From the NCBI GenBank assembly GCA_950097015.1, contig CATNEN010000025.1:4960001-5024000 (forward strand): a stretch of 64,000 bases of DNA, written 5' to 3'. Origin of the DNA: Macrostomum hystrix (taxonomy: Eukaryota > Animalia > Platyhelminthes). The notes under the pieces are model-generated. The model made no database searches and was not told the origin of the DNA. It saw only the letters and a list, made by a program, of their open reading frames with translations. A program made the position numbers and the translations under genes. The first letter of the stretch is position 1, and each line of letters starts with the position of its first letter. Of this stretch, positions 1,457-25,252 are shown piece by piece.

Positions 1457-1700
1457 AATTTGGCAACTTCATTCATGACACGTGACTACTTAGTTGCTTC
1501 GCAGTCTGTTCATCAATAAGTCAGTACTAAATAGCGGTGATGCTGGTCTTAAACACTGGCAAGGTTTCTCTGCTCTCAAACTTTGGCTATGTAAATAAGC
1601 TGTTGCTATTGCCATTTAAATGTGTGCTATTGTTCTCATTAAATTTGTGAATCGCAGTCATCTCGTACAAATAAATAGCCGCCTTTTGTTTCGCCCGCAG

Positions 1701-4115
1701 GGTGCACTGGCTAAGAAGCCGTATAACCCGTTGATCGGCGAGACCTTTCACTGCTCATGGCAGCTTGGTGGAGGAGGAGGAGGAGGAGGAGGCGGCAGCG
1801 GCAGCGGCAGCGGCAGTGACTATCAGCTGGTTTACACTGCCGAGCAGGTGTCGCATCATCCGCCAGTGACCGCTTTCTACCTGGAGTGTCCGCAGAAGCA
1901 GGTGTGGCTAAACGCCAGCATCTACACCAAGAGCAAATTCATGGGCATGAGTATAGGCGTGAACATGTTGGGCCGGATGCAGCTGCACCTGCTAAGGCAT
2001 GGTGAGGTCTACAATATGCAGCTGCCTAGCGCCTACGCGAGATCCATCCTCACCGTGCCATGGGTTGAGCTGGGCGACAAGGTCACCATTAGCTGCGCAA
2101 AGACGGGCTACACCACTTCAGTTGTCTTCCACACCAAGCCATTCTATGGCGGCAAGCTGCATCGGGTAAGCGCCGAAGTTCGAAACCCGGCCAGCGCAGT
2201 AGTCTGCCGAGTCTCTGGCGAGTGGAGCGGCCAGCTAGAGTTCGATTATCCTGCTCTGGGCGTCAAGAAGCTGCTGGATGTCACCCAGCTGCCCGTGACG
2301 CCCAAGCGGGTTCGGCCGAAGCCGCTGCAGAGGCCGTACGAGTCAAGGCGGGTCTGGAGCGCTGTGACCGACGCGCTTCGCTCCGGCGACATCGGACGAG
2401 CCACCGAGGAGAAGCGGAAGGTGAGCCGACGATGCCTTTGCAAACTTAATGAGTGAGGTGTTCAGCCGAGTGAAGGTGTGGAGATAGTGGAGTGATCGTG
2501 GAGTAAGAGTGGAGTGAGAATGGAGTGAGAATTGGGAGAGAGGGTGGATGGAGAGAGAGAGTGGAGAGTGTGGCGAGAGACTGGAGAGAGTGGACAGAGA
2601 ATGGAGAGAGAGTGGAGAGTGTGGCGATAGAGTGGAGATTGTGGCGAGAGAGTGGAGAGTGTTGCGAGAGAGTGGAGAGTGTGGACAGAGAATAGAGAGA
2701 GAGTGGAGAGTGTGGCGATAGAGTGGAGATTGTGGCGAGAGAGTGGAGAGTGTGGCGAGAGAGTGGAGAGTGTGGCGATAGAGTGGAGATTGTGGCGATA
2801 GAGTGGAGACTGTGGCGAGAGAGTGGAGAGTGTTGCGAGAGAGTGGAGAGTGTGGACAGAGAATAGAGAGAGAGTGGAGAGTGTGGCGATAGAGTGGAGA
2901 TTGTGGCGAGAGAGTGGAGAGTGTGGCGATAGAGTGGAGAGTGTGGCGATAGAGTGGAGATTGTGGCGAGAGAGTGGAGAGTGTGGCGAGAGAGTGGAGA
3001 GTGTGGCGAGAGAGTGGAGAGTGTGGCGAGAGAGTGGAGAGTGTGGCGAGAGACTGGAGAGAGTGGACAGAGAATGGAGAGAGAGTGGAGAGTGTGGCGA
3101 TAGAGTGGAGATTGTGGCGAGAGAGTGGAGAGTGTTGCGAGAGAGTGGAGAGTGTGGACAGAGAATGGAGAGAGAGTGGAGAGTGTGGCGATAGAGTGGA
3201 GATTGTGGCGAGAGAGTGGAGAGTGTTGCGAGAGAGTGGAGAGTGTGGACAGAGAATAGAGAGAGAGTGGAGAGTGTGGCGATAGAGTGGAGATTGTGGC
3301 GAGAGAGTGGAGAGTGTGGCGAGAGAGCGGAGAGTGTGGCGATAGAGTGGAGAGTGTGGCGATAGAGTGGAGATTGTGGCGAGAGAGTGGAGAGTGTGGC
3401 GAGAGAGTGGAGAGTGTGGCGAGAGAGTGGAGAGTGTGGCGAGAGACTGGAGAGAGTGGACAGAGAATGGAGAGAGAGTGGAGAGTGTGGCGATAGAGTG
3501 GAGATTGTGGCGAGAGAGTGGAGAGTGTTGCGAGAGAGTGGAGAGTGTGGACAGAGAATGGAGAGAGAGTGGAGAGTGTGGCGATAGAGTGGAGATTGTG
3601 GCGAGAGAGTGGAGAGTGTTGCGAGAGAGTGGAGAGTGTGGACAGAGAATAGAGAGAGAGTGGAGAGTGTGGCGATAGAGTGGAGATTGTGGCGAGAGAG
3701 TGGAGAGTGTGGCGAGAGAGCGGAGAGTGTGGCGATAGAGTGGAGAGTGTGGCGATAGAGTGGAGATTGTGGCGAGAGAGTGGAGAGTGTGGCGAGAGAG
3801 TGGAGAGTGTGGCGAGAGAGTGGAGAGTGTGGCGAGAGAGTGGAGAGTGTGGCGAGAGAGTGGAGAGTGTGGCGAGAGAGTGGAGAGTGTGGACAGAGAA
3901 TGGAGAAAGAGTGGAGTGAGAGGAGAGTGAGTAGACGGCTGTCAGAGTTGCTCACCCGGCATTCCCTGCAGCTGGAGGACATGCAGCGTGGCTGTGAGAA
4001 GTACCGCAAAGACAGGAACCTGCCATTCCCTGTGAAGTACTTCGTTCGCGACGATGACGGCGGGTGGATATTTCGCCGGCCGCTAGAGAGGGACCAAACC
4101 GAAACCGCGGCTTGA
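1701..4115 (+). CDS. Oxysterol-binding-protein-related protein (ORP9/10/11 type), last two coding exons 1701..2420 and 3972..4115; 5' part not identified in the window
   Basis: [17 protein letters not shown], the OSBP signature EQVSHHPP, and [18 protein letters not shown]. Acceptor cccgcag|1701, donor 2420|gtgagc and acceptor ccctgcag|3972 join phase 0 to give EEKRK-LEDMQR...KYF...GGWIF, the typical ORD C-terminus. Confidence 0.9.
2480..3935. repeat. Purine-rich composite minisatellite (core 20-mer GAGAGAGTGGAGAGTGTGGC, with variants and higher-order repeats) filling the last OSBP intron
   Basis: Period seen directly; lies between the donor at 2421 and the acceptor at 3971. Confidence 0.93.
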
Positions 4116-6935: not shown

Positions 6936-8635
6936 GAGGGCAGAGGGCAGAGTTCGCATTTCCCTTCTGTATCAGGCGTCATCCTTCTATCTGCAGGTCA
7001 TTCACCTCAACAAAAATTCTTCCTTTTGGGATAAAAGGAAGATTAGTATATAAACTTAATCTGCTAAGTAAGGTTTAAGTTAATGTCCACTGCAAATTTG
7101 CTTGATTAATTTTTCAGAGTAATTAATTGCTAGCTGCTACTTGTGTACCCAACCAGCTTTTCGTCCCTTTACCTTCTCTGACTTTAATCTGTTTTGTAGC
7201 CATAAAAGTTTCCTACATTTCCCTAACAACCGTTGCGTCTTTCGCTCAAGGCAGCAACAGCAAAAGAGCTGTAAGGCAAGTGGGCCTAACAAAGGACGCT
7301 AATTGGTATTTCCTGCAACAGAAGTAGAAGTACTTCCTGTGAATTGCCCGTGCCGCCGCCTCAGGCTCTACTCTCCTCTCCTAAATTGTCTCCTGTTTGC
7401 TTAGTTACTATGGCGTATTGACACAGCATGACAGTTTCATATTAGGGGTGGGTTTGCAAGCCGCGTGCTAAGGAATTACAGCAAGCAATCCCCATACACC
7501 TGTCGGTGACATTCCTAGATTTTTGCTAGAACAATCTAGTTGCCATGAAGGGGAAAATTTGAAACAGTCCGGACACATTGTGGCAAATTTTGCAAAGTGT
7601 TTCATTTGAGTACAACCAGTTTTCCGCACAGAAGTGCTGAAGTGCATTTTTCGAAAGAAATAAAAGTACATCTTATTTACGGCCCATCAACATTGGGCAC
7701 AAAAAGTTTTGCGCCTAAAAAATGTTGAATTCAGACTTGCTCGGTTTTTCGCAGCAAAGAGCACAAAAAATTGAACAAAAAAATACATGACTGTGTTCGT
7801 GAGTTACATTTTTCTGCATGAATAGTACCTGCTAACCTGCAGTTATGACAGTGACATAAAATAAAAGCATCAGAAGCAAGAGAGACAGGTGAAACAGAAA
7901 ATACTTTCGATATTTGCACATAAGTTGTGCATTATTAAGTGAAATTGTGGTAAATCGACAGTGTTCCAACAGGTAAGAAAGATGATTAACCATAAAAAAT
8001 AGATTAATCGTGTCTTTTGTGCTTACAGAAAAATGATGAGCTTGCTTATGTGCTGAGGGATCGCGCAAAGCAGTTTAGCTGCATGGGTCTACAAATCAAA
8101 CCTGGTGTTTATTTAGGTTGCCATAAATATGCTTATCAAGCCGAAGGGAATAAAAAAACACAACCTTGCTTTTATCCAAATCCCTATAGCAGATGCTAAA
8201 GCCCTGTTCAGAATGCATTCATTTTAAAGCATGCTTAGTTCGTACTTACGTGAAGTGCTTACAAAGCGGCGGCACAACTCTCTTTTGTGGAAAAATCTTT
8301 CTTTAATCCTCGCTTTTTTACTCAACGGCGCAGATGACAGTCGGGGACACTGAATATTTGAATATAGGATGCTCAACAAGGAGCTGTACACTTGCCTGCA
8401 ATCGCTAGGTGTTGCTTGCCTAGTAAACACGCATACCACGTACGATAACAGCCGTCCAAGCTGTGACAAAAAGAAACATGTACAACATGAAAAGATACTG
8501 ATGTAGAACGCCTTTAGTCCTGCATTTGGAAAGGGAATGTGGTGCTGAAGGGAATCAGAAAATCGACTACTGAAGACCGCTTCCAGTTCTTATAGCCTGC
8601 AGAGCGACCTTGATGGGTAGGTCGCGTACCCCCGA

Positions 8636-10711
8636 CTACATATGAGCGGCAGGGACCTCGCTGCATTGAAACTCAACAATGCGAAAGGCCTCTAGAAACT
8701 CGTTAAAGTCAATGCTGCCGTCATTGTTCAGGTCCATAGCCTTTGCCATGTCTGCAACCTCAGATTCTGACAAATTTCGCTGCGTCGCCTGGGAGAGAAT
8801 GCGGCAGCACTCCTTGAACTCCTCCAGGCTGATACGTCCGCTACTGTCTTGATCCATAATGCGAAAGATCGTCTCCAGCTCCTCCTTGTTCTTGTACACA
8901 GCTTCAGTCATCGAGGCGTCGGGCGTGGAGGCAGCCCGGGAATTCTGGGCGCTGTTCTGTACAGCCGCTCGTTGAAAAGTCGACATGTACAACAAGCGAC
9001 CGTCCGGAGAGATTTGGGCCAAGTGCGGACGCAGCGTTCTCCATGGCAAATTAAGCTTCAGTTCACTCTCCATGACGCTGCACCACTGCGCGACTGTCAC
9101 ATAGCCAGTCTTGGCTGAGTCCAGCCGGCCGAAAGCATCCACCAGTTCGGTCTTGGAGGCGGCAATCTTGGCGCGCAGACTGCGCAGAGCGCTGTCTTCG
9201 ACGCTCGACAACTGCACGCCCTGCGGCAGCAGGCTGGCCTTGCTGGCCGTGTACTGCACCGTGCGCAGCTGGCCATCGTTGTCTAATTTCGCATAGGCGC
9301 CCCGGTTGCTGCCCTCCGAGTAATAACTGGAGGCGGAAAATATCGTCAAAACATTGCCACCGTGACAAAACTCCCAGCCTTCTGGCTTGCACTCGTGCGA
9401 CCGAATCAGCATTTTTAGCTTGTTCCGGCGCAGGAAGTCCGCTGTGACGTCTGGACCAAAGTAGCAGCCACCGCCTCGGAATGTGTTCGGCCGACAACCG
9501 GGCTGCGTTTTTGGATCACTCCAAAGCAGGTCCAACACCTGGCGCCATTCCAGATAGTCAACTTTACCATCTTCAGTGCGTGGCGGTCGCAGTGGCGACA
9601 AGTACTTATGGCGATCCAGGCGGCCAAGTAATGCCAGGTCCAACTTGTCTGAGATGCCTCCGTGTGCCACTAAAACTTGGTCATCAATTACAGCCGCGAG
9701 GGGCAGCCAGGCAAACACATCGGCGAACAGCTGCACAATCTTGTTGGCAGTCTGGCGGTACTTTGTCTGCACCTCCTTGATGAAGCCGTAGCGGCAGTTC
9801 ATCACGTGATCTTCATGATTGCCCCGGTTGACGCAGACTGCAGTGGGCCACACCAGCTGGCAAGCAAACAACAAGGCCGCGACCTCTATCGAGTTGGCGC
9901 CGCGGTCGACGAAGTCCCCATTGAAGATATATGGATTTGTGACATCCGGGAGGCCGTTTTTGTAAAATATGACGAGGAGATCGTCCAGCTTTCCGTGCAG
10001 ATCGCCGATCACGGTCACCTGCCGTGAGATGCTCGTGCTAGCCTGGTAAATATTAGGTCTGGCTTGCAGGGCGAGTCGAGTCTCATGCAGCAGTTGCAGC
10101 AGGTACCGGGCGTGGAGCGTTCCATCCTGTCTGAAGTGGTCTATCATCAGCTGCAGCTGGCTGGAATTCAGTGGAAACGTCAGGTGTGGTCCTGGGTACG
10201 ACTTTTCTACCTCTATTTTGTCGAAGCTTGTCTTATCTAGCAAGTCGCGCTCATCTGAGGTTCCGCCGTGACTTTGGCGAAGCCTTTGAGCAAAGCCACC
10301 TGAGCCGCCGTCGTCGCCACCGCCTTCAGCATCCGAAGTGCCAAGACGCAGCATGTCATTGAAGAAGTTGTGCATATGCAGCTGGCTGGCCTCACTCGAG
10401 TACTCGATGCTCTGATAAACGACCCAGGCTGCACGCCGTCTGGCTTCGAGACGAGCCTTGTACCTACGATACCATTTTTGGATGAGCACAGCTGACTTCA
10501 GGCTCACCTGGCTGCTGCTAATTGACTTCGCAGCCGTCTTGCTGGCCTTCATTGCGGGACTAGCGGCCAGCTTCTTCTCTTTGTCGCCGTCACCGAGCGC
10601 AGCGTCGCGAACGCTGGCCGAGTCGTCAGCGGTAGTGCTTCCAACGGCTCCTTGTCCGTTCTCGACGCCGCTAGCATTCTGCGGTGCCACAGAGCTCTGC
10701 CCGCAACCCAT
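8636..10711 (-). CDS. PPEF: PPEF/rdgC Ser/Thr phosphatase with EF-hands, 691 aa, intronless
   Basis: ATG at 10711 gives MGCGQS (myristoylation/palmitoylation-type N-terminus); the track start at 10717 is a TTG. IQ motif LIQKWYRRYKAR. Intact PPP motifs GDLHG, GDFVDRG, RGNHE, HGG, WSDP, RSHE. EF-hands DQDSSGRISLEEF and DLNNDGSIDFNEF. Confidence 0.95.
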   Translation of the reverse strand: MGCGQSSVAPQNASGVENGQGAVGSTTADDSASVRDAALGDGDKEKKLAASPAMKASKTAAKSISSSQVSLKSAVLIQKWYRRYKARLEARRRAAWVVYQSIEYSSEASQLHMHNFFNDMLRLGTSDAEGGGDDGGSGGFAQRLRQSHGGTSDERDLLDKTSFDKIEVEKSYPGPHLTFPLNSSQLQLMIDHFRQDGTLHARYLLQLLHETRLALQARPNIYQASTSISRQVTVIGDLHGKLDDLLVIFYKNGLPDVTNPYIFNGDFVDRGANSIEVAALLFACQLVWPTAVCVNRGNHEDHVMNCRYGFIKEVQTKYRQTANKIVQLFADVFAWLPLAAVIDDQVLVAHGGISDKLDLALLGRLDRHKYLSPLRPPRTEDGKVDYLEWRQVLDLLWSDPKTQPGCRPNTFRGGGCYFGPDVTADFLRRNKLKMLIRSHECKPEGWEFCHGGNVLTIFSASSYYSEGSNRGAYAKLDNDGQLRTVQYTASKASLLPQGVQLSSVEDSALRSLRAKIAASKTELVDAFGRLDSAKTGYVTVAQWCSVMESELKLNLPWRTLRPHLAQISPDGRLLYMSTFQRAAVQNSAQNSRAASTPDASMTEAVYKNKEELETIFRIMDQDSSGRISLEEFKECCRILSQATQRNLSESEVADMAKAMDLNNDGSIDFNEFLEAFRIVEFQCSEVPAAHM

Positions 10712-12280
10712 GCCCAATTTGTTGCTTACAGAGGTGCAAATTTTTCAGAAGTCGCCTTCGGAAGGTTAAGATCAGTATCGAGTCAGTTTGTCAATAAAAT
10801 GAGGCCTCCAGAGAGAACAGAAAGTGGCAGATCTCCACTGATCCTCATGTGCGAGGATCTTGTATTGTGCGAGCCAATTATGCTTTGTCTCTTTTTAATG
10901 CCTTTTAGCTCGCTCTAGTTTTGAAATTCGAAAACGCATCTGGGTCCGTGGCTGTGGTCGCTTCTGTACTGCGTTTCAGCGTTCTCATGTGTCTCGTGTC
11001 CGTCCAGGTTACACCATTGGCTGGCCGTCGCCGTGGAAAATGGGTGAAGGGAAGGAAAAAAGAAAGTTGGCTAGCTTGGCACTGCGGTTGAGGATGGGAA
11101 CGCAGTAACCCTGGGTGATCTGGGCTCTCCTCCTACTCTGGCTCTGGATCCTATGGGTGTGGTCTGGGCTGGACAATATGAGCAAAGAAATAGAGAGAAA
11201 ATTCCTATCCCAGCTACCTTCTACCTTGTTCCTTGCGGCTCACGATCCCTTCGTATTCATAGTCGGAGGCATGCCACTGTACTCTCTCCCCCGTGCCGTC
11301 AGCTAATAGAGGGTGCAGCATTCAAAGCCTGCCCAACCTCTCCACCTGTCTCTCCCTTCTCTTCAGATCCTTCTGTGCCTCCGCCTGTCCCAGCGTCGGA
11401 TTGCCCTAGCCACCCCCCGCAAGCCACTTCTGAAGCGCGCGCCACCTGGGCTCAGCAGCATTGCTGAATTGTCCACCTGGTGGTCCTACGGACCTGCGCT
11501 ACGCGCGCTTTGGTAGTCCAAAGAGACTGGATGGCTAGTACCAACAGAGTGAATTATTTCCAGATGTAAAAATAATGGCTCTGCCTGCAAAAGCTAACAA
11601 ACGAATGAGCTAAGTTTCCTCGACTGGTAACAGGGACGAAAATAAAGGACCATGCAGGGTCTGTTTTTTCGCTATAATTGTCCCTATAGCTACCAATTGA
11701 AATTTCCTATTTTCTCCTCAACATTGTAGCTCAACACTGTAGCCAAATATGTAAGACAATGGACTTCACACGATCCTTGGCCTAGCCCCCTTTATTCTTT
11801 TTTCGTTAAAGCGGACTTCCATAAGGTGCTAATTTCCTTACTCAGCGGTAACGAGCTGCCACTGAACTCAAAATCTAGGTCGGTTTCAGCTCAGAAGCCT
11901 TGTCGAAATTTACAGGATCGGTATATTTGGAACAGAAAAAAGGTAATATGTAAGACGACGAAACATCAGAGGACGAGACGTGTAAATTCAAGTCAAAGAA
12001 AAAAGAGGCATGAAAGAAAGAAAATTCTAACTCGGGATTTTATGTTTATGGTAAAAATACACCCTGCAAAAGGCTAGCGTTGAGGATTTTTTCAGTCTAG
12101 ATGTTATATGTAGAAGTCTTTTGTCTGAATACTTTATTAAACGTACCATAGACAAAAAGAAAAGCAGCGAAATTGTTACAATATTTTTTTGCAGCATTAA
12201 ATAGCACACATTAATGCTCCTGAGCGGTCTCAACTAAAGACAGTAAAAAACTAATTTTCAAGCGACAGAACGCGACAACA

Positions 12281-14119
12281 ATGTCCCAAAGCAACAACGA
12301 GCTGCGCTTTAGGGCGATGGCGCTTGTTATTAGGTGCTTCCTCCGCTACAAAGCTCGTCTAGAGGCCAGACGGAGGGCGGCCTGGGTTATCTACCAAAGT
12401 ATCGAGTACTCAAGCGAAGCAAGTCAGACGAAGCTGCAGGCCTTCCTTAATGAGTTGGTGCGTCTCGGCTCCAGGAGGCTGCAGAGTGGCCTTGAAAACC
12501 GTATCAATCCGAAATCTGAGATCAAGATGGAAGAAAGTTTGCTGAGTAAAACTGCTTATGAAAACATTGAAGTTGAAAGTACATATTCGGGACCTCGTTT
12601 GACCTTTCCACTGAATGTGGCCCAAATTAAAGCCTTGACCGGATACTTTAGCAATGGTGGCGTGCTGCATCCCCGCTACCTGCTGCAGCTACTCCATGAG
12701 ATTCGGCGATACCTGAAGACCAGACCAAACATCTCTAGCGCTAGCACGAGCATATCAAAGCAGATCACTGTGGTTGGCGACCTGTACGGAAAAATCGAGG
12801 ATCTCCTGACAGTTTTCGACAAGAATGGCCTGCCTGACATAAAAAATCCCTACGTCTTTAACGGGAATATGGTGGATCGCGGCGCCAATTCGGTTGAGGT
12901 TGCAGCCTTGCTGTTCGCTTGCCAGCTGGTATGGCCCACCGCGGTCTACATCAATCGCGGAAATCACGAAGATCACTTGTTGAACAACTGTTACGGCTTC
13001 ATCAAGGAGGTGCAGAAAAAGTACCAGCAAGAGGCAAAAAAAATTGTTCCTCTGTTTGCGGAAGTGTTCGCCTGGCTGCCTCTTGCGACTGTTATTGACA
13101 AGCGAACCTTAGTTGTCCACGGGGGCGTATCGGACACGTTGGACCTAGAAAAGTTAGAGTCTCTTGATCGCCATATGTTTTTATCCGTGATTAAACCACA
13201 GGCACCTTTGGGTGGCAAAGTTGACAAGTTAGAATGGAAGCAAGTGACAGATCTGATCTGGAGCGATCCAAGACCTCAATCAGGCTGTGAAAAAAATACG
13301 AGACGCGGAGCTGGTTGCTTCTTTGGACCCGACGTCACGGAAGGCTTCTTGCGACGAAGCAAACTTCAAATGCTTATTCGCTCTCACGAATGTTGCGAAG
13401 GTGGCTTTGAATACTTTCACAACGGCACTGCACTGACTCTGTTTTCGGCGTCCAACTACCATTCAGAAGGCAGCAATCTGGGGGCCTATGCAAATCTGGA
13501 CAGCCAAGGAAAGCCGCACATTGTTCAATTTAGTGCAAGCAAAAGCCTACTGCTTCCGCTAGGTCGCCGACTAGCGGCATTCGAAGACAGCGCTCTTCGC
13601 AGCCTTCGTGCCAAAATCACCGCCTATAAAAGTGAACTCATCACTGGCTTTGCGAAGTGCGATCCGGATTTGAGCGGCTGCGTCAGCGTTGCGACCTGGT
13701 GCAACATCATGGAATCGCATCTGAAGCTCAAACTGCCCTGGCGCGCACTGCGACCGCAGCTGGCGGTGCTGGCTTCGAATGGCCTGGTGATGTACATGTC
13801 CACCTTTCAACGAGCTACTTTAATAAACGAAACCGGGCTTACTAACTCCAAGACTGGCGCATCGATGGCTGAATCCCTGTACAAGAATAAGGAGGAGCTG
13901 GAGACAATCTTTCGCATGATAGACCAAGATAACACAGGTAAAGTTAGTCTGGAAGACTTCAAGGAGTGCTGCGGTCTTCTGTCCCAGATAACGCAACGCG
14001 ATCTATCAGATTCCGATATTTCAGACATGGCAATAGCGATGGACATGAACAATGACGGCTACATAGACTTTAATGAGTTCTTGGAAGCCTTTCGGATTGT
14101 GCAGTTTCAAGAAAAATGA
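12281..14119 (+). CDS. PPEF-like: PPEF paralogue, 612 aa, intronless; predicted catalytically impaired (GDLYG, GNMVDRG)
   Basis: Collinear with the minus-strand PPEF over its whole length. Retains RGNHE, HGG, WSDP, RSHE, FSASNY and EF-hands DQDNTGKVSLEDF and DMNNDGYIDFNEF. Codons TAC at 12785..12787 and AAT at 12866..12868 replace the conserved His and Asp. Confidence 0.92.
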   Translation: MSQSNNELRFRAMALVIRCFLRYKARLEARRRAAWVIYQSIEYSSEASQTKLQAFLNELVRLGSRRLQSGLENRINPKSEIKMEESLLSKTAYENIEVESTYSGPRLTFPLNVAQIKALTGYFSNGGVLHPRYLLQLLHEIRRYLKTRPNISSASTSISKQITVVGDLYGKIEDLLTVFDKNGLPDIKNPYVFNGNMVDRGANSVEVAALLFACQLVWPTAVYINRGNHEDHLLNNCYGFIKEVQKKYQQEAKKIVPLFAEVFAWLPLATVIDKRTLVVHGGVSDTLDLEKLESLDRHMFLSVIKPQAPLGGKVDKLEWKQVTDLIWSDPRPQSGCEKNTRRGAGCFFGPDVTEGFLRRSKLQMLIRSHECCEGGFEYFHNGTALTLFSASNYHSEGSNLGAYANLDSQGKPHIVQFSASKSLLLPLGRRLAAFEDSALRSLRAKITAYKSELITGFAKCDPDLSGCVSVATWCNIMESHLKLKLPWRALRPQLAVLASNGLVMYMSTFQRATLINETGLTNSKTGASMAESLYKNKEELETIFRMIDQDNTGKVSLEDFKECCGLLSQITQRDLSDSDISDMAIAMDMNNDGYIDFNEFLEAFRIVQFQEK

Positions 14120-14374
14120 GGTCGCGTCTGCTGTCAAAGAGAATTTAGTTTTTGCTAATTTATGCAATAAACCTGAAGATAAAGCCTGTCCTTTTCATTT
14201 TATTTTATTTTCCAGATTCCGTCTGAAGCTAACGAAAGATTTCCGAAACAAACTTTGAATTTTAGTACTTCCAGATTTAAATGGATTTTTTAATCTTAAT
14301 GGATTTGATGGGGATGTTCACTGAAGTCAGAAATCTGTTTAAAATATTATAGAATCGACACCTAGCCCAGGAGT

Positions 14375-14632: not shown

Positions 14633-14964
14633 TTTTCGAGGAAACTGACAGCAGTACAATCACCGGTGAGGCAAGAAATTCATTCGAGAGTATGGATGAA
14701 AACGGGAATAAAGTAAATGACAGGAGTGTTGTTGTATACCTATGGTGCATAGATAACGAGATGCATGAAGACTGCCGCATAGCAACAATGTAGACTTCTC
14801 ATTAAATATGGATGCTCATTGAGATGAGATACGCCAGCCCTGTTGTGCTTGCACTGTGAGGAGAGCTATACAATTAGTATTCTTCCCCACCTCATAGATT
14901 TCAGGTTGTCTACTGTGTATCACACTGTTTCAGTGTTTCACTCAAATTCATTAAATTTAAGTTT

Positions 14965-17062
14965 CCACCGAAATCCAAGGTTGTTTCCCCCGAAATCCAA
15001 GGTTGTTTCCCCCGAAATCCAAGGTTGTTTCCCCCGAAATCCAAGGTTGTTTCCCCCGAAATCCAAGGTTGTTTCCCCCGAAATCCAAGGTTGTTTCCCC
15101 CGAAATCCAAGGTTGTTTACCTCAAAATCCAATGTTGTTTCACCCGAAATTCTATTTTGTTTCCCCCAAAATCCAAGGTTGTTTCCCCCGAAATCCAAGG
15201 TTGTTTCCCCCGAAATCCAAGGTTGTTTCCCCCAAAATCCAATGTTGTTACCCCCGAAATCCAATGTTGTTTCCCCAAAATCCAATGTTGTTTCCCCCAA
15301 AATCCAAGGTTGTTTCCCCCAAAATCCAATGTTGTTACCCCCGAAATCCAATGTTGTTTCCCCCAAAATCCAATGTTGTTACCCCCGAAATCCAATGTTG
15401 TTTCCCTCAAAATCCAATGTTGTTTCCCCCAAAATCCAATGTTGTTTCCCCAAAATCCAATGTTGTTTCCCCCAAAATCCAAGGTTGTTTCCCCCAAAAT
15501 CCAAGGTTGTTTCCCTCAAAATCCATGGTTGTTTCCCTCAAAATCCATGGTTGTTTCCCCAAAATCCAAGGTTGTTCCCCCAAAATCCAAGGTTGTTTCC
15601 CTCAAAATCCTAGGTTGTTTCCCCTGAAATCCAAGGTTGTTTCCCTCAAAATCCAATGTTGTTTCCCCCAAAATCCAGGGTTGTTTCCCCTGAAATCCAA
15701 GGTTGTTTCCCTCAAAATCCAAGGTTGTTTCCCTCAAAATCCAGGGTTGTTTCCCCTGAAATCCAAGGTTGTTTCCCTCAAAATCCAATGTTGTTTCCCC
15801 CAAAATCCAAGGTTGTTTCCCCCAAAATCCAATGTTGTTACCCCCGAAATCCAATGTTGTTTCCCCCAAAATCCAATGTTGTTTCCCCCAAAATCCAATG
15901 TTGTTTCCCCCAAAATCCAAGGCTGTTTCCCCCAAAATCCAAGGTTGTTTCCCCCAAAATCCAATGTTGTTTCCCCCAAAATCCAATGTTGTTTCCCCCA
16001 AAATCCAAGGCTGTTTCCCCCAAAATCCAAGGTTGTTTCCCCCAAAATCCAAGGTTGTTTCCCCCAAAATCCAATGTTGTTTCCACCAAAATCCAAGGCT
16101 GTTTCCCCCAAAATCCAAGGTTGTTTCCCCCAAAATCCAATGTTGTTTCCCCCGAAATACGAGGTTGTTTCCCCCAAAATCCAATGTTGTTTCCCCCAAA
16201 ATCCATGGTTGTTTCCCCCAAAATCCATGGTTGTTTCCCCCAAAATCCAATGTTGTTTTCCCCAAAATCCATGGTTGTTTCCCCCAAAATCCATGGTTGT
16301 TTCCCCCAAACTCCAAGGCTGTTTCCCCCAAAATCCAATATTGTTTCCCCCGAAATCCATGGTTGTTTCCCCCAAAATCCAAGGTTGTTTCCCCCGAAAT
16401 CCAAGGTGTTTCCCCCAAAATCCAATATTGTTTCCCCCAAAATCCATGGTTGTTTCCCCCAAAATCCAAGGTTGTTTCCCCCAAAATCCAATGTTGTTTC
16501 CCCCAAAATCCAAGGTTGTTTCCCCCAAAATCCAAGGTTGTTTCCCCCAAAATCCAAGGCTGTTTCCCCCAAAATCCAAGGTTGTTTCCCCCAAAATCCA
16601 ATGTTGTTTCCCCCGAAATACGAGGTTGTTTCCCCCAAAATCCAATGTTGTTTCCCCCGAAATACGAGGTTGTTTCCCCCAAAATCCAATATTGTTTCCC
16701 CCAAAATCCAAGGGGTTGTTTCCCCCGAAATCCAAGGTGTTTCCCTCAAAATCCAATGTTGTTTCCCCCGAAATACGAGGTTGTTTCCCCCAAAATCCAA
16801 TGTTGTTTCCCCCAAAATCCAAGGTTGTTTCCCCCGAAATCCAAGGTGTTTCCCCCAAAATCCAATATTATTTCCCCCAAAATCCAAGGTTGTTTCCCCC
16901 GAAATCCAAGGTGTTTCCCCCAAAATCCAATATTGTTTCCCCCAAAATCCAATATTGTTTCCCCCGAAATCCAAGGTGTTTCCCTCAAAATCCAAGGTTG
17001 TTTCCCTCAAAATCCAAGGTTGTTTCCCTCAAAATCCAATGTTGTTTCCCCAAAATCCAAGG
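14965..17062. repeat. 22-bp minisatellite (GTTGTTTCCCCCRAAATCCAAK), about 95 copies
   Basis: Period seen directly; a 22-aa periodicity runs through all frames of the track ORFs. Confidence 0.96.
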
Positions 17063-17812
17063 TTTTTTTACTTGTTAGGAGAATTTTCCACAGTAGACAC
17101 TACTGATTAGTAGCAAGTATTGAAAGGCCCCTGCGTTCTGTCCTCAGAGTGGCGAATAGTAGCGTTGAATGCGTCTTGATTCAACTGCACAAACTGCACG
17201 AATAGCCAGAGCCATTTCTTTAAATAAGTGTTCCTCAATAACATAAGCTAATCGGCAAAGAGAAAGAGAGAAAAAACACAGATTGCTCAGGAAAAAAATA
17301 GTTCTTTGGCAGCAAGAAACTCTCGCGTGCTTTACTCATCTCAGCTCACGCACTCATTCTCCTGTACAAATCCTCCGAAATATCTAAAAAGATCCACTTC
17401 ACCTCATGAGAATCGAATGGAAATGCAGCTCTCTATCTCTCTCCCCTTCCTTCATCTCTCTCTCAGATTCTGGGCATCATTGCTTCAAGGCCGGATCGAT
17501 AAAATGCCTCACCGCGGGCCTGGCCAAATCCCTCCTGCTCAAACCTCCGCCACTCTTCCCCAGCACTCACTGCTCTGCAGTCATCATCTGCGTTCCCATC
17601 AGCGCTCCTAACCAACCTCCCTGAAATTTTCCTTCCCAATGTGCTATCGGGCAAGGAAATATAGGCATGGGAGGGGTGTTTATTGGGCATCCGCGATATT
17701 AAAATGTCCTCTCCCCTCTTGTCGACCAGCTTCCATTCCGTTCGTTGTAATTTGACCAAGGCTTTGGATTCTTGTGAGAGCCGCAGCTAAGCCAATTTAC
17801 CAATTAACGATT

Positions 17813-18674
17813 ATGTCGCAGTATAGACACGGACTATGCGGATGCTTCGACGACTGCGGTGAGTTGGACTGTTGTGTTCAGCTTTTCAGTCCATGGACAA
17901 GTGGAGGCACGCAACACCCACCTAAATTTCTAACCCAGCAAATGCTAGTACCCATTTACATCTGGCCTAGCTGAAGCAATGGTATATGTGACTCGTAAGG
18001 GCTGAAAGTCACAAATAAATCCATGGGGCTGAGATTAGGTGAGTGAGTGGCAGAGCAGTGTAAGGTCCCTGAGCTCGATTCCGCGGCGAGGCAACATTAA
18101 TTCCGCAGCTTGGGGGCTTGTAATGGAATTTAAGTCATTGAGGGCCAACCTCCAAGTCAAAGCGACAGTGACGAACCTCCTCGCTAGAAGCGGGTCTCGT
18201 GTCACCAAATGATGTCCAGCACCCAACAGTGCACTCCTGCATATATTATGAATATTATTTATTATGGGGCTAACATTTGAGCCCCAAACTCTCGTTGTCA
18301 CGTGAGTCAAGTGAATTCCAAAATCACTGCTGACTGTTAACACAAGCGCAACAGAGTGCTAAGCATTGTGGGCCATCCACCCGACCCGCGCAGGCATCTG
18401 CATCATGGCCTTCTCCTTCCCCTGCTATACGCACGGCAAGACCGCCGAAGCGGTTGGTGACAACTGCATCCAGTGCGGCGTCGGCTATTTCTTCCTGGCC
18501 CCCTGCGTTGGCGCAGTGATTCGCGGCAAGGTGCGCGACAGGCAGGGCATTCCAGGCGGCTTCGTCGGCGATTTCTTTACTCACCTGTGCTGCCCTCTGT
18601 GCGCCTTGGTGCAGGACGCCCAGGAGGTCAAGGACATGGTGCCACCAAGCGCACTGTGCGTGGAGCGCGAATGA
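17813..18674 (+). CDS. PLAC8-domain (cornifelin-like) Cys-rich protein, 108 aa; exons 17813..17858 and 18394..18674
   Basis: MSQYRHGLCGCFDDC-G-ICIMAFSFPC...CCPLCALVQDAQE matches the PLAC8 pattern. Phase-1 intron gtgag...cgcag. Confidence 0.9.
17860..18005 (-). mobile_element. SINE family 1 fragment in the PLAC8 intron
   Basis: CAGTCCATGGAC and GTACCCATTTACA...CTGAAGCAATG match the family 1 body in reverse. Confidence 0.65.
18040..18245 (+). mobile_element. SINE family 2, internally deleted copy in the PLAC8 intron
   Basis: GTGGCAGAG...GGTCCCTGAGCTCGATTCCGCGGCGAGGC, CTTGGGGGCTTG, GAGGGCCAACCTCCAAG and GTCACCAAATGATG are shared with the 41100 copy. Confidence 0.75.
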
Positions 18675-18735
18675 GGAACTGATTGCATTCGCTGAGTCAG
18701 TCAAGTCACTCAATCGCTGAGTCGTCGCTGTGTCA

Positions 18736-20855: not shown

Positions 20856-21803
20856 ATTTTTTAAAGCCGTAGGCAAAGAGCCATGCTGAATGAAGAATTC
20901 ATTCATGAGCAGACTCCTTCATGCATGGAGGGACTTTCATATGGTGCAGGAAGCTATGGCCATTGTGAATTCAGGCAGGATAATTAATTAGATTATTTCT
21001 TTTCTTCTGTGATTTCTGTGGCTTGAAGGCATTATGCAGCCTATTAATAACGGTACAATCTTAACAGACAAGCCTTAGTCACTGAAGGGACTAAAGTTGA
21101 TAGTGGTAAAATATTTTACTTAAGAAGAACAAAAATAGAGGCACAAATCACGATACTTATGCGATATTAGCTAAGTAGCAAGTAGCGAGAGTGATAAGGA
21201 TTACTATAAGCGTCTTGAATTATAATATGGTTATAACTTTAGTTTAATATGAAGCTTACCAAACAATGTAGGGACAAGGAATTTTAATAGAGAATAATGT
21301 TCCATTTAAACGCAAGAAATTTTGTCTTTACTAAGGCTACATGGAAGCAGTTTCGCGAACTAATAAAAAGAAGCAATAATGCGAATTAAAAAGCGATAGA
21401 AAAAATCGTGCACTACTACTTTCTTTACCGATAGTGAGTAGCAGGATCAGAAAGTCTATGTTTTAAAGAAAAAATCGTTCCAAAAACATCGAGTGGGGTT
21501 GCTTTATATGCGTAAAATTTTTGTTTTAAATTGATCTAGGCCGCATGCGTGAAGTGATAAATAGAAATGTGCATTGTTGGAACAATAGCATCGAAGATTG
21601 GATCATTGGACTGACTAGTTTTAACAATATACCATTTACAGAAGCGCGGAGCAGTGATTTTAGTGCAGCGAAGCCGATTACAAAAAAGCGATAAATTTCG
21701 CTCAAACCAACTCAATGGTCAACTCAACACGATACAACGCAGGGTCTCTCTAGAGTCTTCTTTCGCTTGATCAGTTCTGCTCAGCCGTTGAGTCAATGAT
21801 TAT

Positions 21804-22627
21804 TTAGGAGGTGCTCAAAGTGCCGGCTCCCTGACCGAAACCGACTCCCTTAGGACCGAAGTTCCTGCCATAGCAGGCTGTTTGAACCGGTTTTGCGTGG
21901 GTGAAAACAAGCGTGAATTCAAAGCGCCGACATGGAATCCAAACTCACAACAACAACGCACTCACCCTTGCAGTAGATCTCCTCCTTGGTGTTGCACAGC
22001 TTCGTGCTGTCCAGGCCAGTGCCACAGTCCTTGCAGCGGAAGCAGCTCTTGTGAAAGCTCACCTGTGGGACACAGAGGCTCAAGATGCCATTAAACAGTA
22101 AATTTAACCAGGCTGCAAGTTTGTGAGGCCGCTTACCCCGGTCGGACAACCTATGGCCTTCTCGGCGTCGTTAACCTTCTTGCCGCAGCGAGGGCAGCCG
22201 CCCTGGTCAACTGGCACAATGGCGCCGCCCATGGCGGCCACCTCGCTAGACGGCTTGTTGGAGACGGTCTCCGTATTGCCCAGGTGCTTGCCGCTGTCCA
22301 TGTTGAGGGCGCCAGCGCCGCCGCCGAAGCCGTAGCCCTTGGGGCCGTATTTGCGGCCGTGGCACTGCTTGCAGAAGATCTCGCCCTCATGCTCGGCGAT
22401 GGTCGTGCTTTCCAGGAACTTGTTGCAGAGGCCTGGAACACAATTTTCATGATTGCTATGAAATAGAATGCTTCAAATAAAAATGGTTGCGTCAAGCGAA
22501 GCTGGCGCTCACCGCATTTCAGGCACTGCTTGTGCCACTTCTTGCCGGCGGCCAGTTTTTCCTCGGCCGCGTACACCGCCTTGTCGCACTTGGGACACTT
22601 GGCTTGTTCAACGGGCTTGAACGGCAT
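21804..22627 (-). CDS. CSRP: Cysteine- and glycine-rich two-LIM protein (CRP/muscle LIM protein), 193 aa; exons 22627..22513, 22432..22137, 22062..21966, 21877..21804
   Basis: CPKC...WHKQCLKC-GLC...IFCKQCHGRKYGPKGYGFGGGAGAL; second LIM CPRC...FHKSCFRCKDC...[23 protein letters not shown]. All three introns are GT-AG (80, 74, 88 bp) and the phases close the frame. Confidence 0.94.
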
Positions 22628-24390
22628 GACTGCGGGTTGGGTCAGACGAGAAACTGGCAGAGCTGAACGAAACCTGTCAGTGAGGGAGCGCCGGTCGTCA
22701 GCGCAAGTCTCGCAGCTTTATGCAGGTCCACACACCCCCTCACCGGACACAGCTGCACACAGCGAATGCGATTCCTCCTATACCTGAAACCCTGCGCAAC
22801 CGGCTCACCAACCCCTCACCATCCGCAAGTACGTACGTTCGTTTCACTCCAAAAATTCTTCCGTACCTCGTGATCATGTTGTGCTCTTTCGCATTAACCA
22901 GACCCTGTACGATTCATAATGCCAGGCCAAAGTAGGCCAGGATCAACTGGCTGTTCAAGTGCTCTAAACTACATTTTCTATTCTTTCTTTATTTTCTGCC
23001 CTTAATTGACGTATTTACAGGCTGCAGCAATAGCCTGATTAGACTGATGCTAACAGAAGCGAATCTACAGTGCTGGTAGGCGGAGCTTGATAAATTTCCA
23101 GCCCAAACGGAAGGTCAGCAGCTGTTCCACCAGGTTCGGCTATTGCTGTCTGCCCCACCCATCGATTCGATCGTCCAGCCCCGCGCACTCGCTCACCGCC
23201 CGGAGTCAGCATCCTATACTTCTGGTCTTTGGGTTGAAATGCCAGTCTTCAGTGCACTGTGGGAAGAGGCAAAACGCAAGATGGGAGGCTGACACAGTAC
23301 TAGGTACGTTCGAATCGATACTCGGGTCACGTCTAGCCCACACAGGGGGGGTTTGGTCCTTCACGTTTTGTTTTTGCCCAGTGGCTGCAGTTCGGTACCG
23401 GATAAACTAGCTGAAGCTACAAGAAAGGTGAAGCATTGTCAGTTTTTCCAGCTCGAAGAAGGCTTTGGCAATACTGAGTTTTGAAGGCGATTTAACATTT
23501 AAGAATAAAGGACTTCGTTTCTTGGAAAATATAAAGGCTGATTTTCGCGGAAAAATACACTAATGCGAGTTACACACTTATTGAAAGCAGATCCAGTGCT
23601 GTTCTTTTAAAATATTTTGCAAATAATGTTGCTTCAACGAATTTTATAAAGATTCATTCATGAAAAACAGATCTTTATTTTTTTCGTCTATTTATCACGA
23701 TGCACAATAGCCAGTCAATAGCTATCTCGTGATTAACTAAATTTACAGTCCTGCACTTTCTAATCAAGTATAAGTGCATTTTCACGCTTTTTTTGTGCAT
23801 TTTTTCTGTGAAAATTAGCCTTTAAATTTTTTTCCCCTTGAAATGAAGTCACGTCCTTCTTCTTCTAATGGTCCTTGGCAATTTGCTTTCTCTCAGTATT
23901 GGCTCTGCTTGTAAAAGGCGGCAGTAGTAAATGTTTTGTCAAATCTATCAGCCTTCAAGCCATTAGTGATAGGCGCCCGTCAAACTATTCCGAAATGACA
24001 GCTGCAAGTAATAGACGTTAGCTGTGTCAGCGTGTCAACACTTTCAGGCCAATTGTGCTAAACATGTGCAGTTAATTACTGCTCCACTACACCTGTACTG
24101 TACTGGCACTGCAGTCAGCATTGAGATCTGCACTACTTTATGCAATTTTTATGGCCAGTAAAAATGTTTTTAGCTTAACGAATGCCGCCACTGCCACTTT
24201 TTGCATTATCAGTACGTGTTTGGAAATTTAGCAGAATGACACGGCACACACTTCTCGAACTTCTAGCTGGCTGTGAAATCGTCAGGTGTGGGACTGCCCA
24301 ATGCAACTGCGCCGTTCGCAACACGCGCAACGAGAAGCCCTCCTCTAACGGTGGGCCGCAGACATCTCAGCCCAGCCTGCCTGCGCCCGC

Positions 24391-24396: not shown

Positions 24397-24484
24397 GCGC
24401 GACTTAAGGTGACTCGAGTGAGTACCCAATCAATATTTTTCTTTTATTCCAGCTGCCAGCCCAAAGTAGTTTTGAAAGTCAACA

Positions 24485-25252
24485 ATGAAGGCCGTGGCGA
24501 TTCTTCTCCTGGCTCTGTGCTCGACCGCCTATGCTCAGCTGAAGCACAACGATTGCGGTGAGGACTATTAAAATGGTAAACAGTTTCCAATTGTGAACAG
24601 TTTCTGCACTACTACTACTCGCATTTCTGCTTGTCTAGGCGGTGACGGCCATGCGGCCCGCATCAGCCTTGTTGCCACTGACCCCTACCCGGTCAAGGCT
24701 CGAGAGGGCTTCACCTTTATTGTCAGCGTCAGGGGCCAGGTTCGCCGCGCTGTTGGCAACTCCAGCTTCAAGCTGTCCCTGAGGCGCAAGGTGCTCGGCT
24801 TCTGGGTGCCGATCCCCTGCCTGGCCGGTGAGTTACCGGAATTCACCGTTCATCTCCTGTCAAACTCTTCATAGCTCTCGGAGTAATGAGCTGTTCTCAT
24901 GTTTTTCTTTAAATTCATTCAGGCTACGGCAGCTGCACCTACGACAACGGCTGCCAGCTGCTGGAGGCCCTGCTGAATGACAAGCCGATCCCGGATGTCT
25001 GCGGTGGCATTGCTCAGCAGGACATCAACCTGGCCCAGTCCATCACCCTGCCGGAGATCCCCGGCCCGCTAGCTTGGCTTGTGTCTGTAAGTCTTGCTGA
25101 ATATCCACGACTTGCTGAATAGCTTAAACCACGACTCAACTGGCCTCAACTTTCACCCCCCCAAACAGGGCGAGTACCAGGCCAAGGGCGAGTTCAGGGA
25201 CGCCAACGGTGACGTCATGTGCCTGGAGCTGGAGGGCCGTCTGGACTCCTAA
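24485..25252 (+). CDS. GM2A: Secreted ML-domain lipid-binding protein, GM2-activator-like, 169 aa; exons 24485..24557, 24639..24827, 24923..25086, 25169..25252
   Basis: Signal peptide MKAVAILLLALCSTAYA. IPCLAGYGSCTYDNGC and AWLVSGEYQAK...MCL resemble the GM2A motifs IPC..GSC and WL.TG.Y. GT-AG introns with phases 1,1,0. The gene structure is firm; orthology is less so. Confidence 0.8.

What the first reader, a model, noticed from the sequence alone, without database searches (positions are those of the whole stretch)
12776..12883. Predicted PPP-family pseudophosphatase beside an active PPEF paralogue
Seen: the plus-strand PPEF copy encodes GDLYG (TAC, Y169) instead of GDxHG and GNMVDRG (AAT, N196) instead of GDxVDRG. 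The minus-strand neighbour has both motifs intact. Established: these His and Asp residues are metal ligands (PP1 H66 and the bridging D92), and their loss normally cripples catalysis. Yet the 612-codon ORF is uninterrupted and keeps the phosphate-binding and other site residues (DRG, GNHE, HGG, RG, RSHE, SASNY) and two canonical EF-hands. Inference: a selected Ca2+-sensing pseudophosphatase that could act as a phosphosubstrate trap, decoy or regulator of its active twin. Pseudoenzymes are uncommon in the PPP family and I know of no described PPEF example.
Basis: partly seen in the sequence, partly recalled or inferred. Interest (0 to 1): 0.82.

Follow-up and report, generated by a model that had tools for sequence, protein, structure and literature searches.

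The report
Flatworm PPEF paralogue lacking two metal ligands
One of two neighbouring calcium-regulated protein phosphatase (PPEF) genes in a Macrostomum-like flatworm has lost two metal-binding residues and its calmodulin-binding core, yet it is old, intact, apparently transcribed and still under purifying selection, so it is a credible but untested "dead-enzyme" relative of a normal phosphatase.

Summary
The plus-strand ORF 12281-14119 (612 aa) reads GDLYG (TAC, Y169) and GNMVDRG (AAT, N196). Its minus-strand neighbour and all 134 other PPEF sequences inspected have GDxHG where that motif is present, and all have GDxVDRG.

The two genes are not recent twins. Microsynteny and a tree show an ancient tandem pair shared with Macrostomum lignano. 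The M. lignano positional orthologue (P0001) keeps His, Asp and the IQ motif, so the losses are specific to this lineage.

The gene is not a dead pseudogene:
- An RNA-like 2001-nt contig from an independent 2020 study covers exactly the gene, with no differences.
- A branch codon model gives omega about 0.12 and rejects omega = 1 (2dlnL 84.5).
- The open frame allows free drift over less than about 5% divergence.

The gene does evolve faster than its relatives, about 2.1 times faster than its orthologue, with a protein branch about five times longer than its neighbour's. It has also changed four core calmodulin-binding IQ residues, the -Z Glu of EF-hand 1 and an Arg at the RDGC dimer interface.

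Loss of catalysis, and any trap or decoy role, are inference only. The age of the two substitutions could not be determined. I rate it a new variant of a known kind, of moderate interest.

The parts
12281..14119 (+). Intronless CDS of the divergent 'short' PPEF paralogue (612 aa, no N-terminal acylation signal)
   Evidence: ORF. Pfam Metallophos, PPP5 region and EF-hands. rdgC structures 8jfw/8jfy at E about 1e-152. Positional and phylogenetic orthologue of M. lignano P0001.
12785..12787 (+). TAC = Y169, replacing the His of GDxHG (PP1 H66, a metal ligand)
   Evidence: The four closest relatives all have CAC here. Confirmed in runs X1 and X9. Ligand role from PMC6587554.
12866..12868 (+). AAT = N196, replacing the first Asp of GDxVDRG (PP1 D92, the carboxylate that bridges the two metals)
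   Evidence: Relatives have GAC. Confirmed in X1, X9 and X10. Bridging role from PMC6587554.
12323..12346 (+). Degenerate classical IQ core (L15-R22, VIRCFLR in place of IQKWYRR)
   Evidence: I16V, Q17I, W19C and R21L fall at columns at least 97% conserved in 121 other PPEFs. Pfam IQ scores only in the neighbour. The matching RDGC residues I12, W15 and R17 contact calmodulin. 9 of 27 columns changed only in this copy.
12362..12475 (+). Conserved autoinhibitory lid (C-terminal part of the extended IQ motif, aa 28-65), including W35, Y43 and E46
   Evidence: Nearly identical to the neighbour. RDGC W31, Y39 and E42 form the lid over the catalytic site.
13922..13957 (+). EF-hand 1 loop (D548-D559), with S552T and E559D
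   Evidence: RDGC E550 is a Ca2+ ligand.
14042..14077 (+). EF-hand 2 loop (D588-E599), canonical
12245..14245 (+). Extent of the RNA-like 2001-nt contig in run X1. The end is extrapolated from the contig length, because the stretch laid ended at 14200.
   Evidence: table 8, record 2: no differences, and no cover of the 1.5-kb spacer. An AATAAA lies at about 14166.
8636..10711 (-). Intronless CDS of the conserved, predicted active PPEF paralogue (691 aa from the ATG; MGCGQS acylation-type N-terminus, IQ, GDLHG, GDFVDRG)
   Evidence: 82% identical to the M. lignano tandem copy L001:15523-17583.
10712..12280 (.). 1.57-kb spacer between the two head-to-head genes (presumed divergent promoter region)
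   Evidence: Covered by the DNA run X7 but not by X1. An in-frame stop at 12221-12223 lies upstream of the + ATG.

Best explanation
The plus-strand gene is a functional, expressed but fast-evolving member of an old 'short, non-acylated' PPEF paralogue lineage, and in this flatworm lineage its binuclear metal centre has been disabled.

Shown:
- A tandem duplication older than the split from Macrostomum lignano produced two genes. One is a membrane-type copy with an MGCG N-terminus (the minus-strand neighbour). The other is a short copy without that N-terminus (this gene, orthologous to M. lignano P0001).
- In this lineage only, the short copy changed His to Tyr in GDxHG, Asp to Asn in GDxVDRG, four core calmodulin-contact residues of the IQ motif, the -Z Glu of EF-hand 1, and the Arg matching RDGC R228.
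- It remains an open, apparently transcribed gene under purifying selection.

Inferred:
- The metal site built from PP1 D64/H66/D92 has lost two of its three protein ligands, including the bridging carboxylate. The metal-activated water mechanism should therefore be lost or reduced by orders of magnitude.
- The arginines and the Asn/His that hold phosphate remain.
- The protein most likely acts without catalysis, as a soluble PPEF-shaped binder of phosphoproteins or PPEF partners. Its lid may still respond to Ca2+ through its own EF-hands but no longer through calmodulin in the usual way.
- Which partner it binds, and whether it opposes the neighbouring active enzyme, is unknown.
For: - Motif changes are real and unique among the 134 other PPEF sequences inspected.
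- Ligand roles of PP1 D64, H66 and D92 (PMC6587554).
- Metal-ligand mutations abolish activity in another PPP without disturbing the fold, and the dead domain still has biological effects through binding (BSU1 D510N/H707K, bioRxiv 10.64898/2026.01.06.697939).
- Microsynteny with M. lignano: OSBP, MGCG-PPEF, short PPEF, PLAC8, LIM.
- Tree: win_plus groups with P0001/P0003/P0015 at 98/95 and win_minus with the M. lignano tandem copy at 97/92. The AU test rejects the two window genes as sisters (p = 0.004).
- Omega on the win_plus branch is 0.11-0.13. Omega = 1 is rejected with 2dlnL = 84.5 for five taxa and 60 for four taxa.
- Only 12 of 139 highly conserved columns are changed.
- Open-frame bound: with stops alone, P = 0.03 at 5% neutral divergence.
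- An RNA-like contig exactly spans the gene in an independent study, and pieces are present in two runs of a 2024 study.
- The lid and the EF tandem are conserved.
Against: - No activity, metal-content or binding data exist.
- Non-canonical motifs do not prove inactivity. Yeast Ppn2 is flagged as a pseudophosphatase yet is active (PMC13216928).
- The changes hit several functional modules at once (IQ, EF-hand 1, metal site, dimer Arg). The gene evolves 2.1 times faster than its orthologue (93 vs 44 unique changes, p = 3e-5). Its GC3 has dropped to 0.57, against 0.66-0.68 in relatives. This is also the pattern expected from relaxed constraint.
- The two substitutions could be recent. The only other organisms available are about 99.8% identical, so conservation of Tyr/Asn across species is untested.
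- dS is saturated (at least 2), so the omega values are approximate.
- Run X1's library type is not on record. Its RNA nature is inferred from its coverage pattern.
Confidence: 0.6

Rival explanations
1. Young loss of function. The short paralogue became dispensable in this lineage and was recently inactivated. It is still transcribed and still open only because too little time has passed, so it is heading towards being a pseudogene rather than being a selected pseudoenzyme.
For: - Several functional modules are damaged at once: IQ core, EF-hand 1 -Z, two metal ligands and the dimer-interface Arg.
- Amino-acid evolution is accelerated and GC3 is lower.
- This paralogue lineage is decay-prone in M. 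lignano too. P0015 deviates at 27 conserved columns and its called gene does not translate cleanly.
- An intact frame is compatible with up to about 1-3% neutral divergence.
- The whole-branch omega cannot detect a short terminal neutral phase.
Against: - Branch-average omega is 0.12, no higher than in the M. lignano orthologues that keep the catalytic residues (0.18-0.20).
- All other active-site residues, the lid and the EF tandem are intact.
- In run X1 the gene is covered by one full-length contig, while the conserved neighbour shows only a 181-nt piece. Contig depth is a poor measure of expression.
- The state is shared by all organism labels sampled.
Confidence: 0.2
2. Still an enzyme. 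The protein keeps phosphatase or another phosphoesterase activity with a remodelled metal site, for example a single metal, or a tyrosinate-ligated Fe(III) as in purple acid phosphatases, perhaps with altered substrate or metal preference.
For: - The general-acid His229 and its partner Asp199, both phosphate-binding arginines, and the second metal site (N228, H280, H369) are all retained.
- Asn can still ligate a metal through its carbonyl oxygen.
- Tyr is a metal ligand in purple acid phosphatases (my own knowledge, not tested here).
- Ppn2 is an example of an active 'pseudophosphatase'.
Against: - Two of the three protein ligands of one metal site are changed, including the only bridging carboxylate.
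- None of the 134 other PPEF sequences inspected tolerates either change.
- Metal-ligand mutants of other PPPs are inactive (for PP1, PP2A and lambda phosphatase mutants, my recollection of the literature, not checked here).
Confidence: 0.12
3. Artefact. The two codons are sequencing or assembly errors, or the ORF is a chimera of the two paralogues.
For: None found.
Against: - Three studies (2020, 2023, 2024) give the same letters at both codons.
- The two paralogues are only 66% identical in DNA, so reads cannot be confused between them.
Confidence: 0.01

Closest known systems
PPEF / RDGC phosphatases (Drosophila RDGC, C. elegans PEF-1, human PPEF1/2; structures 8jfw, 8jfy)
   Same: Same architecture and clear homology: extended-IQ region, PPP5-like linker, PPP catalytic domain, and an EF-like plus EF-hand tandem. 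The lid residues (RDGC W31, Y39, E42), the catalytic-site Arg (RDGC R333, here R342) and the EF-hand 2 ligands are conserved.
   Different: His to Tyr and Asp to Asn at two metal ligands. The classical IQ core that binds calmodulin is replaced (RDGC I12, Q13, W15, R17 become V, I, C, L). EF-hand 1 has -Z Glu to Asp. The Arg matching RDGC R228 at the dimer interface is Cys.
Macrostomum lignano short PPEF P0001 (BOX15_Mlig030419g2), the positional orthologue
   Same: Intronless, lacks the MGCG acylated N-terminus, lies next to an MGCG-type PPEF and between the PLAC8/LIM and OSBP genes, and groups with the window gene in the tree.
   Different: P0001 keeps GDLHG, GDFVDRG and the IQ motif, and has half as many lineage-specific changes. 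In M. lignano the pair is head-to-tail; here it is head-to-head.
Predicted PPP-family pseudophosphatases of kinetoplastids (kPPP group and the second PP2B cluster; PMC2175518)
   Same: PPP catalytic domains with substitutions at catalytically important residues and long branches, proposed to be inactive but retained.
   Different: Those are not PPEFs, have no EF-hand tandem, and are conserved across three kinetoplastid genomes. Here the state is known from one species cluster only.
Soluble versus acylated RDGC isoforms in Drosophila (RDGC-S versus RDGC-M/L; PMC6161916)
   Same: A membrane-attached acylated form coexists with a soluble form lacking the acylated N-terminus (abstract shown).
   Different: In Drosophila both forms come from one locus and both are catalytically competent. 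Here they are separate tandem genes, and the soluble one has a disabled metal site.
VPS29 and other catalytically silent metallophosphoesterase-fold proteins
   Same: A calcineurin-like phosphoesterase fold kept as a binding scaffold after metal ligands were replaced (my recollection; not tested here).
   Different: VPS29 is an ancient, universally conserved scaffold outside the PPP family. This gene is a lineage-specific change within a signalling phosphatase.

Membership tests
PPEF/rdgC subfamily of PPP phosphatases | PPP (calcineurin-like) catalytic domain, placed by phylogeny inside the PPEF clade | tested here: met
   Pfam Metallophos E = 2e-24. rdgC 8jfw at E = 9e-152 over residues 9-609. 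Nested in the flatworm PPEF clade at 100/100.
PPEF/rdgC subfamily of PPP phosphatases | Intact signature motifs GDxHG, GDxVDRG and GNHE | tested here: not met
   GDLYG and GNMVDRG; GNHE is intact. All 134 other sequences have the canonical motifs where present.
PPEF/rdgC subfamily of PPP phosphatases | N-terminal calmodulin-binding IQ motif | tested here: not met
   No Pfam IQ hit, unlike the neighbour. Q17I, W19C and R21L fall at near-invariant columns. Whether calmodulin still binds cannot be told from sequence.
PPEF/rdgC subfamily of PPP phosphatases | C-terminal EF-like/EF-hand tandem | tested here: met
   EF-hand_1, EF-hand_7 and related Pfam families pass their cut-offs. EF-hand 2 is canonical; EF-hand 1 has E559D.
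Pseudophosphatase (pseudoenzyme) | Homologue of active enzymes with catalytic or metal-binding residues replaced | tested here: met
   H169Y and D196N at the equivalents of PP1 H66 and D92.
Pseudophosphatase (pseudoenzyme) | Lack of catalytic activity | not testable with these tools
   Needs recombinant protein and assays. Ppn2 shows that motif-based calls can be wrong.
Pseudophosphatase (pseudoenzyme) | Maintained by selection and expressed, so not a pseudogene | tested here: inconclusive
   Whole-branch omega is about 0.12 and omega = 1 is rejected. The ORF is intact and an RNA-like contig covers it. Selection after the two substitutions could not be isolated, because no sufficiently diverged orthologue carrying them was available.
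Processed or decaying pseudogene | Disabled reading frame (stops or frameshifts), or omega near 1 | tested here: not met
   612 codons are open and omega = 1 is rejected. Being intronless is shared with the whole clade, including the conserved MGCG copies.

The most novel reading that the evidence does not exclude
This would be the first PPEF-family pseudophosphatase. It would be a soluble, calmodulin-uncoupled protein gated by its own EF-hands that binds phosphorylated PPEF substrates (in other animals, receptors and channels of sensory cells) without hydrolysing them. It would thereby buffer or oppose the membrane-anchored active paralogue encoded 1.6 kb away, as a natural substrate trap that arose from an enzyme still active in M. 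lignano.
Probability: 0.2. Interest if true: 0.65.

Novelty: new variant of a known kind. Interest (0 to 1): 0.42.

Why it matters
Pseudoenzymes are well documented among kinases and tyrosine phosphatases but are rarely reported in the PPP family. One recent survey states that none is reported for the human PPP-like fold (PMC13216928).

This case has a natural comparison built in. The orthologue in the laboratory model M. lignano keeps the catalytic residues, and an active paralogue sits next door. That would allow a clean test of what a PPEF scaffold does without catalysis, and of how the lid, EF-hand and calmodulin control described for RDGC can be uncoupled.

Its weight is limited for now, because the state is known only from near-identical sequences (about 99.8% in this gene) and nothing has been measured.

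Tried and rejected
- **Kinetoplastid origin.** I first suspected this from the intronless genes and the MGCG N-terminus. It was rejected because the best hits are M. lignano PPEFs and the microsynteny matches that genome.
- **Recent inverted duplication.** Physical adjacency suggested the two window genes were a recent duplicate pair. The tree, the AU test (p = 0.004) and the synteny reject this.
- **Closer relatives carrying Tyr/Asn.** A full-length word search found nothing above 58% identity. A search with the 161-aa motif region alone, to catch short transcript fragments, found nothing above 59%. The runs of other organism labels turned out about 99.8% identical. Conservation of the substitutions across species therefore remains untested.
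- **Pairwise YN00 dN/dS.** This failed because of saturation. I used NG86 and my own GY94-type F3x4 branch model instead. Its omega values are approximate, because dS is at least 2 and GC3 differs between the genes.
- **Enrichment of changes at catalytic residues.** Two of about ten catalytic residues are changed, against ten of about 129 other conserved columns. I judged this unlikely to be significant but ran no formal test, so I make no such claim.
- **Steps not run.** I did not run structure prediction, because no coordinates are returned with which to measure active-site geometry, and homology to the solved RDGC structure is already unambiguous.
Full report
**1. What is in the sequence**

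The plus strand carries an uninterrupted 612-codon ORF at 12281-14119. Codons 166-170 read GDLYG, with TAC for Y169 at 12785-12787. Codons 195-201 read GNMVDRG, with AAT for N196 at 12866-12868.

The minus strand carries a second PPEF ORF 1.57 kb away, head to head. It is listed from a TTG, but its real start is the ATG at 10711. That gives a 691-aa protein beginning MGCGQS, with GDLHG and GDFVDRG. The two proteins are 60% identical.

Both have the Pfam Metallophos domain, the PPP5-type linker and EF-hand families. Only the minus copy scores for the IQ motif. The plus copy matches the solved Drosophila RDGC structures 8jfw and 8jfy at E about 1e-152 over residues 9-609.

**2. The letters are real, and the gene appears to be transcribed**

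Contigs of four public runs were laid on 8600-14200.
- The 2023 DNA run X7 covers everything.
- Run X1 comes from a different, 2020 study. It has one 2001-nt contig that starts at 12245, 36 nt before the ATG, and runs past the stop with no differences. It has nothing on the spacer and only a 181-nt piece on the neighbour. That is the pattern of an mRNA library, although the library type is not on record.
- Runs X9 and X10 (2024, other organism labels) have several pieces on the plus gene that cover both codons unchanged. The only differences inside the CDS are a synonymous A>T at 13036 and a low-depth C>T at 12594.

These organisms are about 99.8% identical in this gene. They confirm the letters but say nothing about long-term conservation.

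**3. How unusual the two residues are**

In a 15-sequence alignment every other PPEF has His and Asp at these positions. All 120 best full-length hits have GDxHG and GDxVDRG. All 14 fragment hits have GDxVDRG, and the 10 in which the first motif was found have GDxHG.

In PP1 the equivalent D92 bridges the two metals. D64 and H66 form one metal site, N124, H173 and H248 form the other, and R96 holds the phosphate (PMC6587554). The plus copy has therefore lost two of the three protein ligands of one site, including the only bridging carboxylate. It keeps D167, D199, R200, N228, H229, H280, R342, H369 and Y393.

**4. The neighbour is not a recent twin**

The closest database proteins are Macrostomum lignano PPEFs at 52-58% identity, so the window comes from a Macrostomum-like flatworm.

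A tblastx comparison of the window with the M. lignano locus around P0001 shows conserved gene order:
- M. lignano: OSBP-like gene, MGCG-type PPEF, short PPEF, PLAC8, LIM, one further gene.
- Window: OSBP at about 3933-4115, win_minus, win_plus, PLAC8 at about 17813-18678, LIM at about 21773-22645, and a further gene at about 24475-25104.

The M. lignano MGCG-type copy is an intronless 686-aa ORF at L001:15523-17583 that is absent from the called-gene list.

A maximum-likelihood tree supports the same pairing. It joins win_minus with that M. lignano copy (97/92) and win_plus with P0001/P0003/P0015 (98/95). An AU test rejects the two window genes as sisters (p = 0.004).

So the tandem pair predates the species split, and win_plus is the orthologue of P0001, inverted in this lineage. 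P0001 keeps His, Asp and the IQ motif. All members of this clade whose loci I could read are intronless.

**5. Selection**

Amino-acid identity between orthologues differs sharply:

| Orthologue pair | aa identity | dN |
|---|---|---|
| win_minus vs M. lignano MGCG copy | 82% | 0.106 |
| win_plus vs P0001 | 58% | 0.318 |

A relative-rate count gives 93 changes unique to win_plus against 44 unique to P0001 (p = 3e-5). For the MGCG pair the counts are 15 against 11. In the protein tree the win_plus end branch is 0.78, against 0.15 for win_minus.

The gene has nevertheless been constrained. My GY94-type branch model on five genes gives these omega values:

| Branch | omega |
|---|---|
| win_plus | 0.11-0.13 |
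| MGCG copies | 0.05-0.07 |
| M. lignano short copies | 0.18-0.20 |

Fixing omega = 1 on the win_plus branch costs 2dlnL = 84.5 with five taxa and 60 with four taxa.

There are caveats. dS is saturated (at least 2), and GC3 has dropped to 0.57 against 0.66-0.68 in relatives, so the values are approximate.

3.7% of point mutations in this ORF would create a stop. The open frame therefore limits any free drift to less than about 5% divergence (P = 0.03 for stops alone), and to less if frameshifts are counted. A short, recent neutral phase cannot be excluded.

**6. What else changed**

Among 139 columns that are at least 97% conserved in 121 other PPEFs, win_plus deviates at 12, compared with 3 for win_minus and 7 for P0001. 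The 12 are I16V, Q17I, W19C, R21L, H169Y, D196N, R237C, L326I, V384A, Y394H, S552T and E559D.

The RDGC/calmodulin structures (PMC11962071) allow these to be mapped:
- **IQ core.** The first four changes are RDGC I12, Q13, W15 and R17. I12 and W15 are hydrophobic anchors for the calmodulin C-lobe, and R17 pairs with the N-lobe. Mutating them abolishes or strongly weakens binding and activity.
- **EF-hand 1.** E559 is RDGC E550, a Ca2+ ligand.
- **Dimer interface.** R237 is RDGC R228, which stacks on Trp318 of the second protomer in the 2:2 complex. P0001 has also lost this Arg.

By contrast, the C-terminal half of the extended IQ motif, which lies as a lid over the active site (RDGC W31, Y39, E42), is almost identical in the two window genes. 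So is the Arg it contacts (RDGC R333, here R342). The classical IQ segment is the most changed region, with 9 of 27 columns changed only in win_plus.

**7. Interpretation**

- **Shown:** an old, intact, apparently transcribed, selectively constrained but accelerated PPEF paralogue. Its lineage-specific changes remove two metal ligands, the calmodulin-binding core, one EF-hand ligand and a dimer contact.
- **Established knowledge:** these ligands build the binuclear centre that activates the nucleophilic water. Metal-ligand mutants of another PPP, BSU1, lose all detectable activity while keeping the fold, and can still act biologically through binding.
- **Inferred:** the protein is catalytically dead or nearly so and works as a soluble PPEF-shaped binder. 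Its lid may still be moved by its own EF-hands, but probably no longer by calmodulin in the usual way.
- **Speculative:** a role as a substrate trap or antagonist of the acylated neighbour. Pairing with the neighbour through the RDGC-type interface is made less likely by R237C.

The rivals are a young loss of function on the way to a pseudogene (about 0.2), residual or altered catalysis with a remodelled metal site (about 0.12) and artefact (about 0.01).

**8. Comparison with the literature**

Full-text searches for 'pseudophosphatase' with 'PPEF', or with 'PPP' and 'GDxHG', returned few papers.
- Kinetoplastid PPP pseudophosphatases have been predicted: the kPPP group and a second PP2B cluster (PMC2175518).
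- A 2026 fungal survey states that no pseudophosphatase is reported for the human PPP-like fold. It lists an Aspergillus gene called PpefA in its PPP-like-fold row of pseudophosphatases, alongside Ppn2 and Ppp2. It describes the PPP-like pseudophosphatases it found as belonging to the Ppn2 subgroup, and notes that yeast Ppn2 is active despite its non-canonical motif (PMC13216928).
- I found no EF-hand-bearing PPEF described as a pseudoenzyme. The library is incomplete, so this is not proof of absence.

**9. Verdict**

It is a new variant of a known kind, of moderate interest.

Noticed in passing
window 14961-17068: A 2.1-kb minisatellite of about 96 copies of a 22-bp unit (consensus GTTTCCCCCAAAATCCAAGGTT, 89% matches) lies directly downstream of the + PPEF gene. 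It produces long spurious ORFs in all six frames.
   Followed up: partly
L001:15523-17583 (M. lignano NIVC01000493.1): An intact, intronless 686-aa MGCG-type PPEF gene lies 3.6 kb downstream of P0001 but is missing from the called-gene list of that locus. It is the orthologue of the window's minus-strand gene, at 82% aa identity.
   Followed up: yes
L003:6001-7754 (M. lignano P0015): This third M. lignano short PPEF copy deviates at 27 conserved columns. Its C-terminal part after about residue 520 looks out of frame, and the called gene does not translate to the deposited protein. It is probably a decaying copy.
   Followed up: partly
window 12160-12282: Two alleles occur just upstream of the + ATG in the DNA run X7: four substitutions and two 1-bp indels, at depth 22 against 49. 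X10 carries the minor allele's variants over the part its contig covers.
   Followed up: no
window 3933-4115, 17813-18678, 21773-22645, 24475-25104: OSBP-like, PLAC8-like, LIM-domain and one further gene lie in the same order as around the M. lignano PPEF pair. That is at least 20 kb of conserved microsynteny, apart from the inversion of the short PPEF.
   Followed up: partly
window 1-4000 and 42000-48000: Blocks with extreme GC skew (about +0.6 and -0.57) and AT skew suggest further strand-asymmetric satellite arrays.
   Followed up: no
window 8636-10711 and 12281-14119; L001, L002: Every PPEF gene of this flatworm clade whose locus I could read is intronless. PPEF genes of most other animals have many exons (my own knowledge), so the clade may descend from an old retrocopy. 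The M. lignano MGCG proteins P0002, P0004 and P0005, which fall outside this clade, could not be checked for introns.
   Followed up: partly
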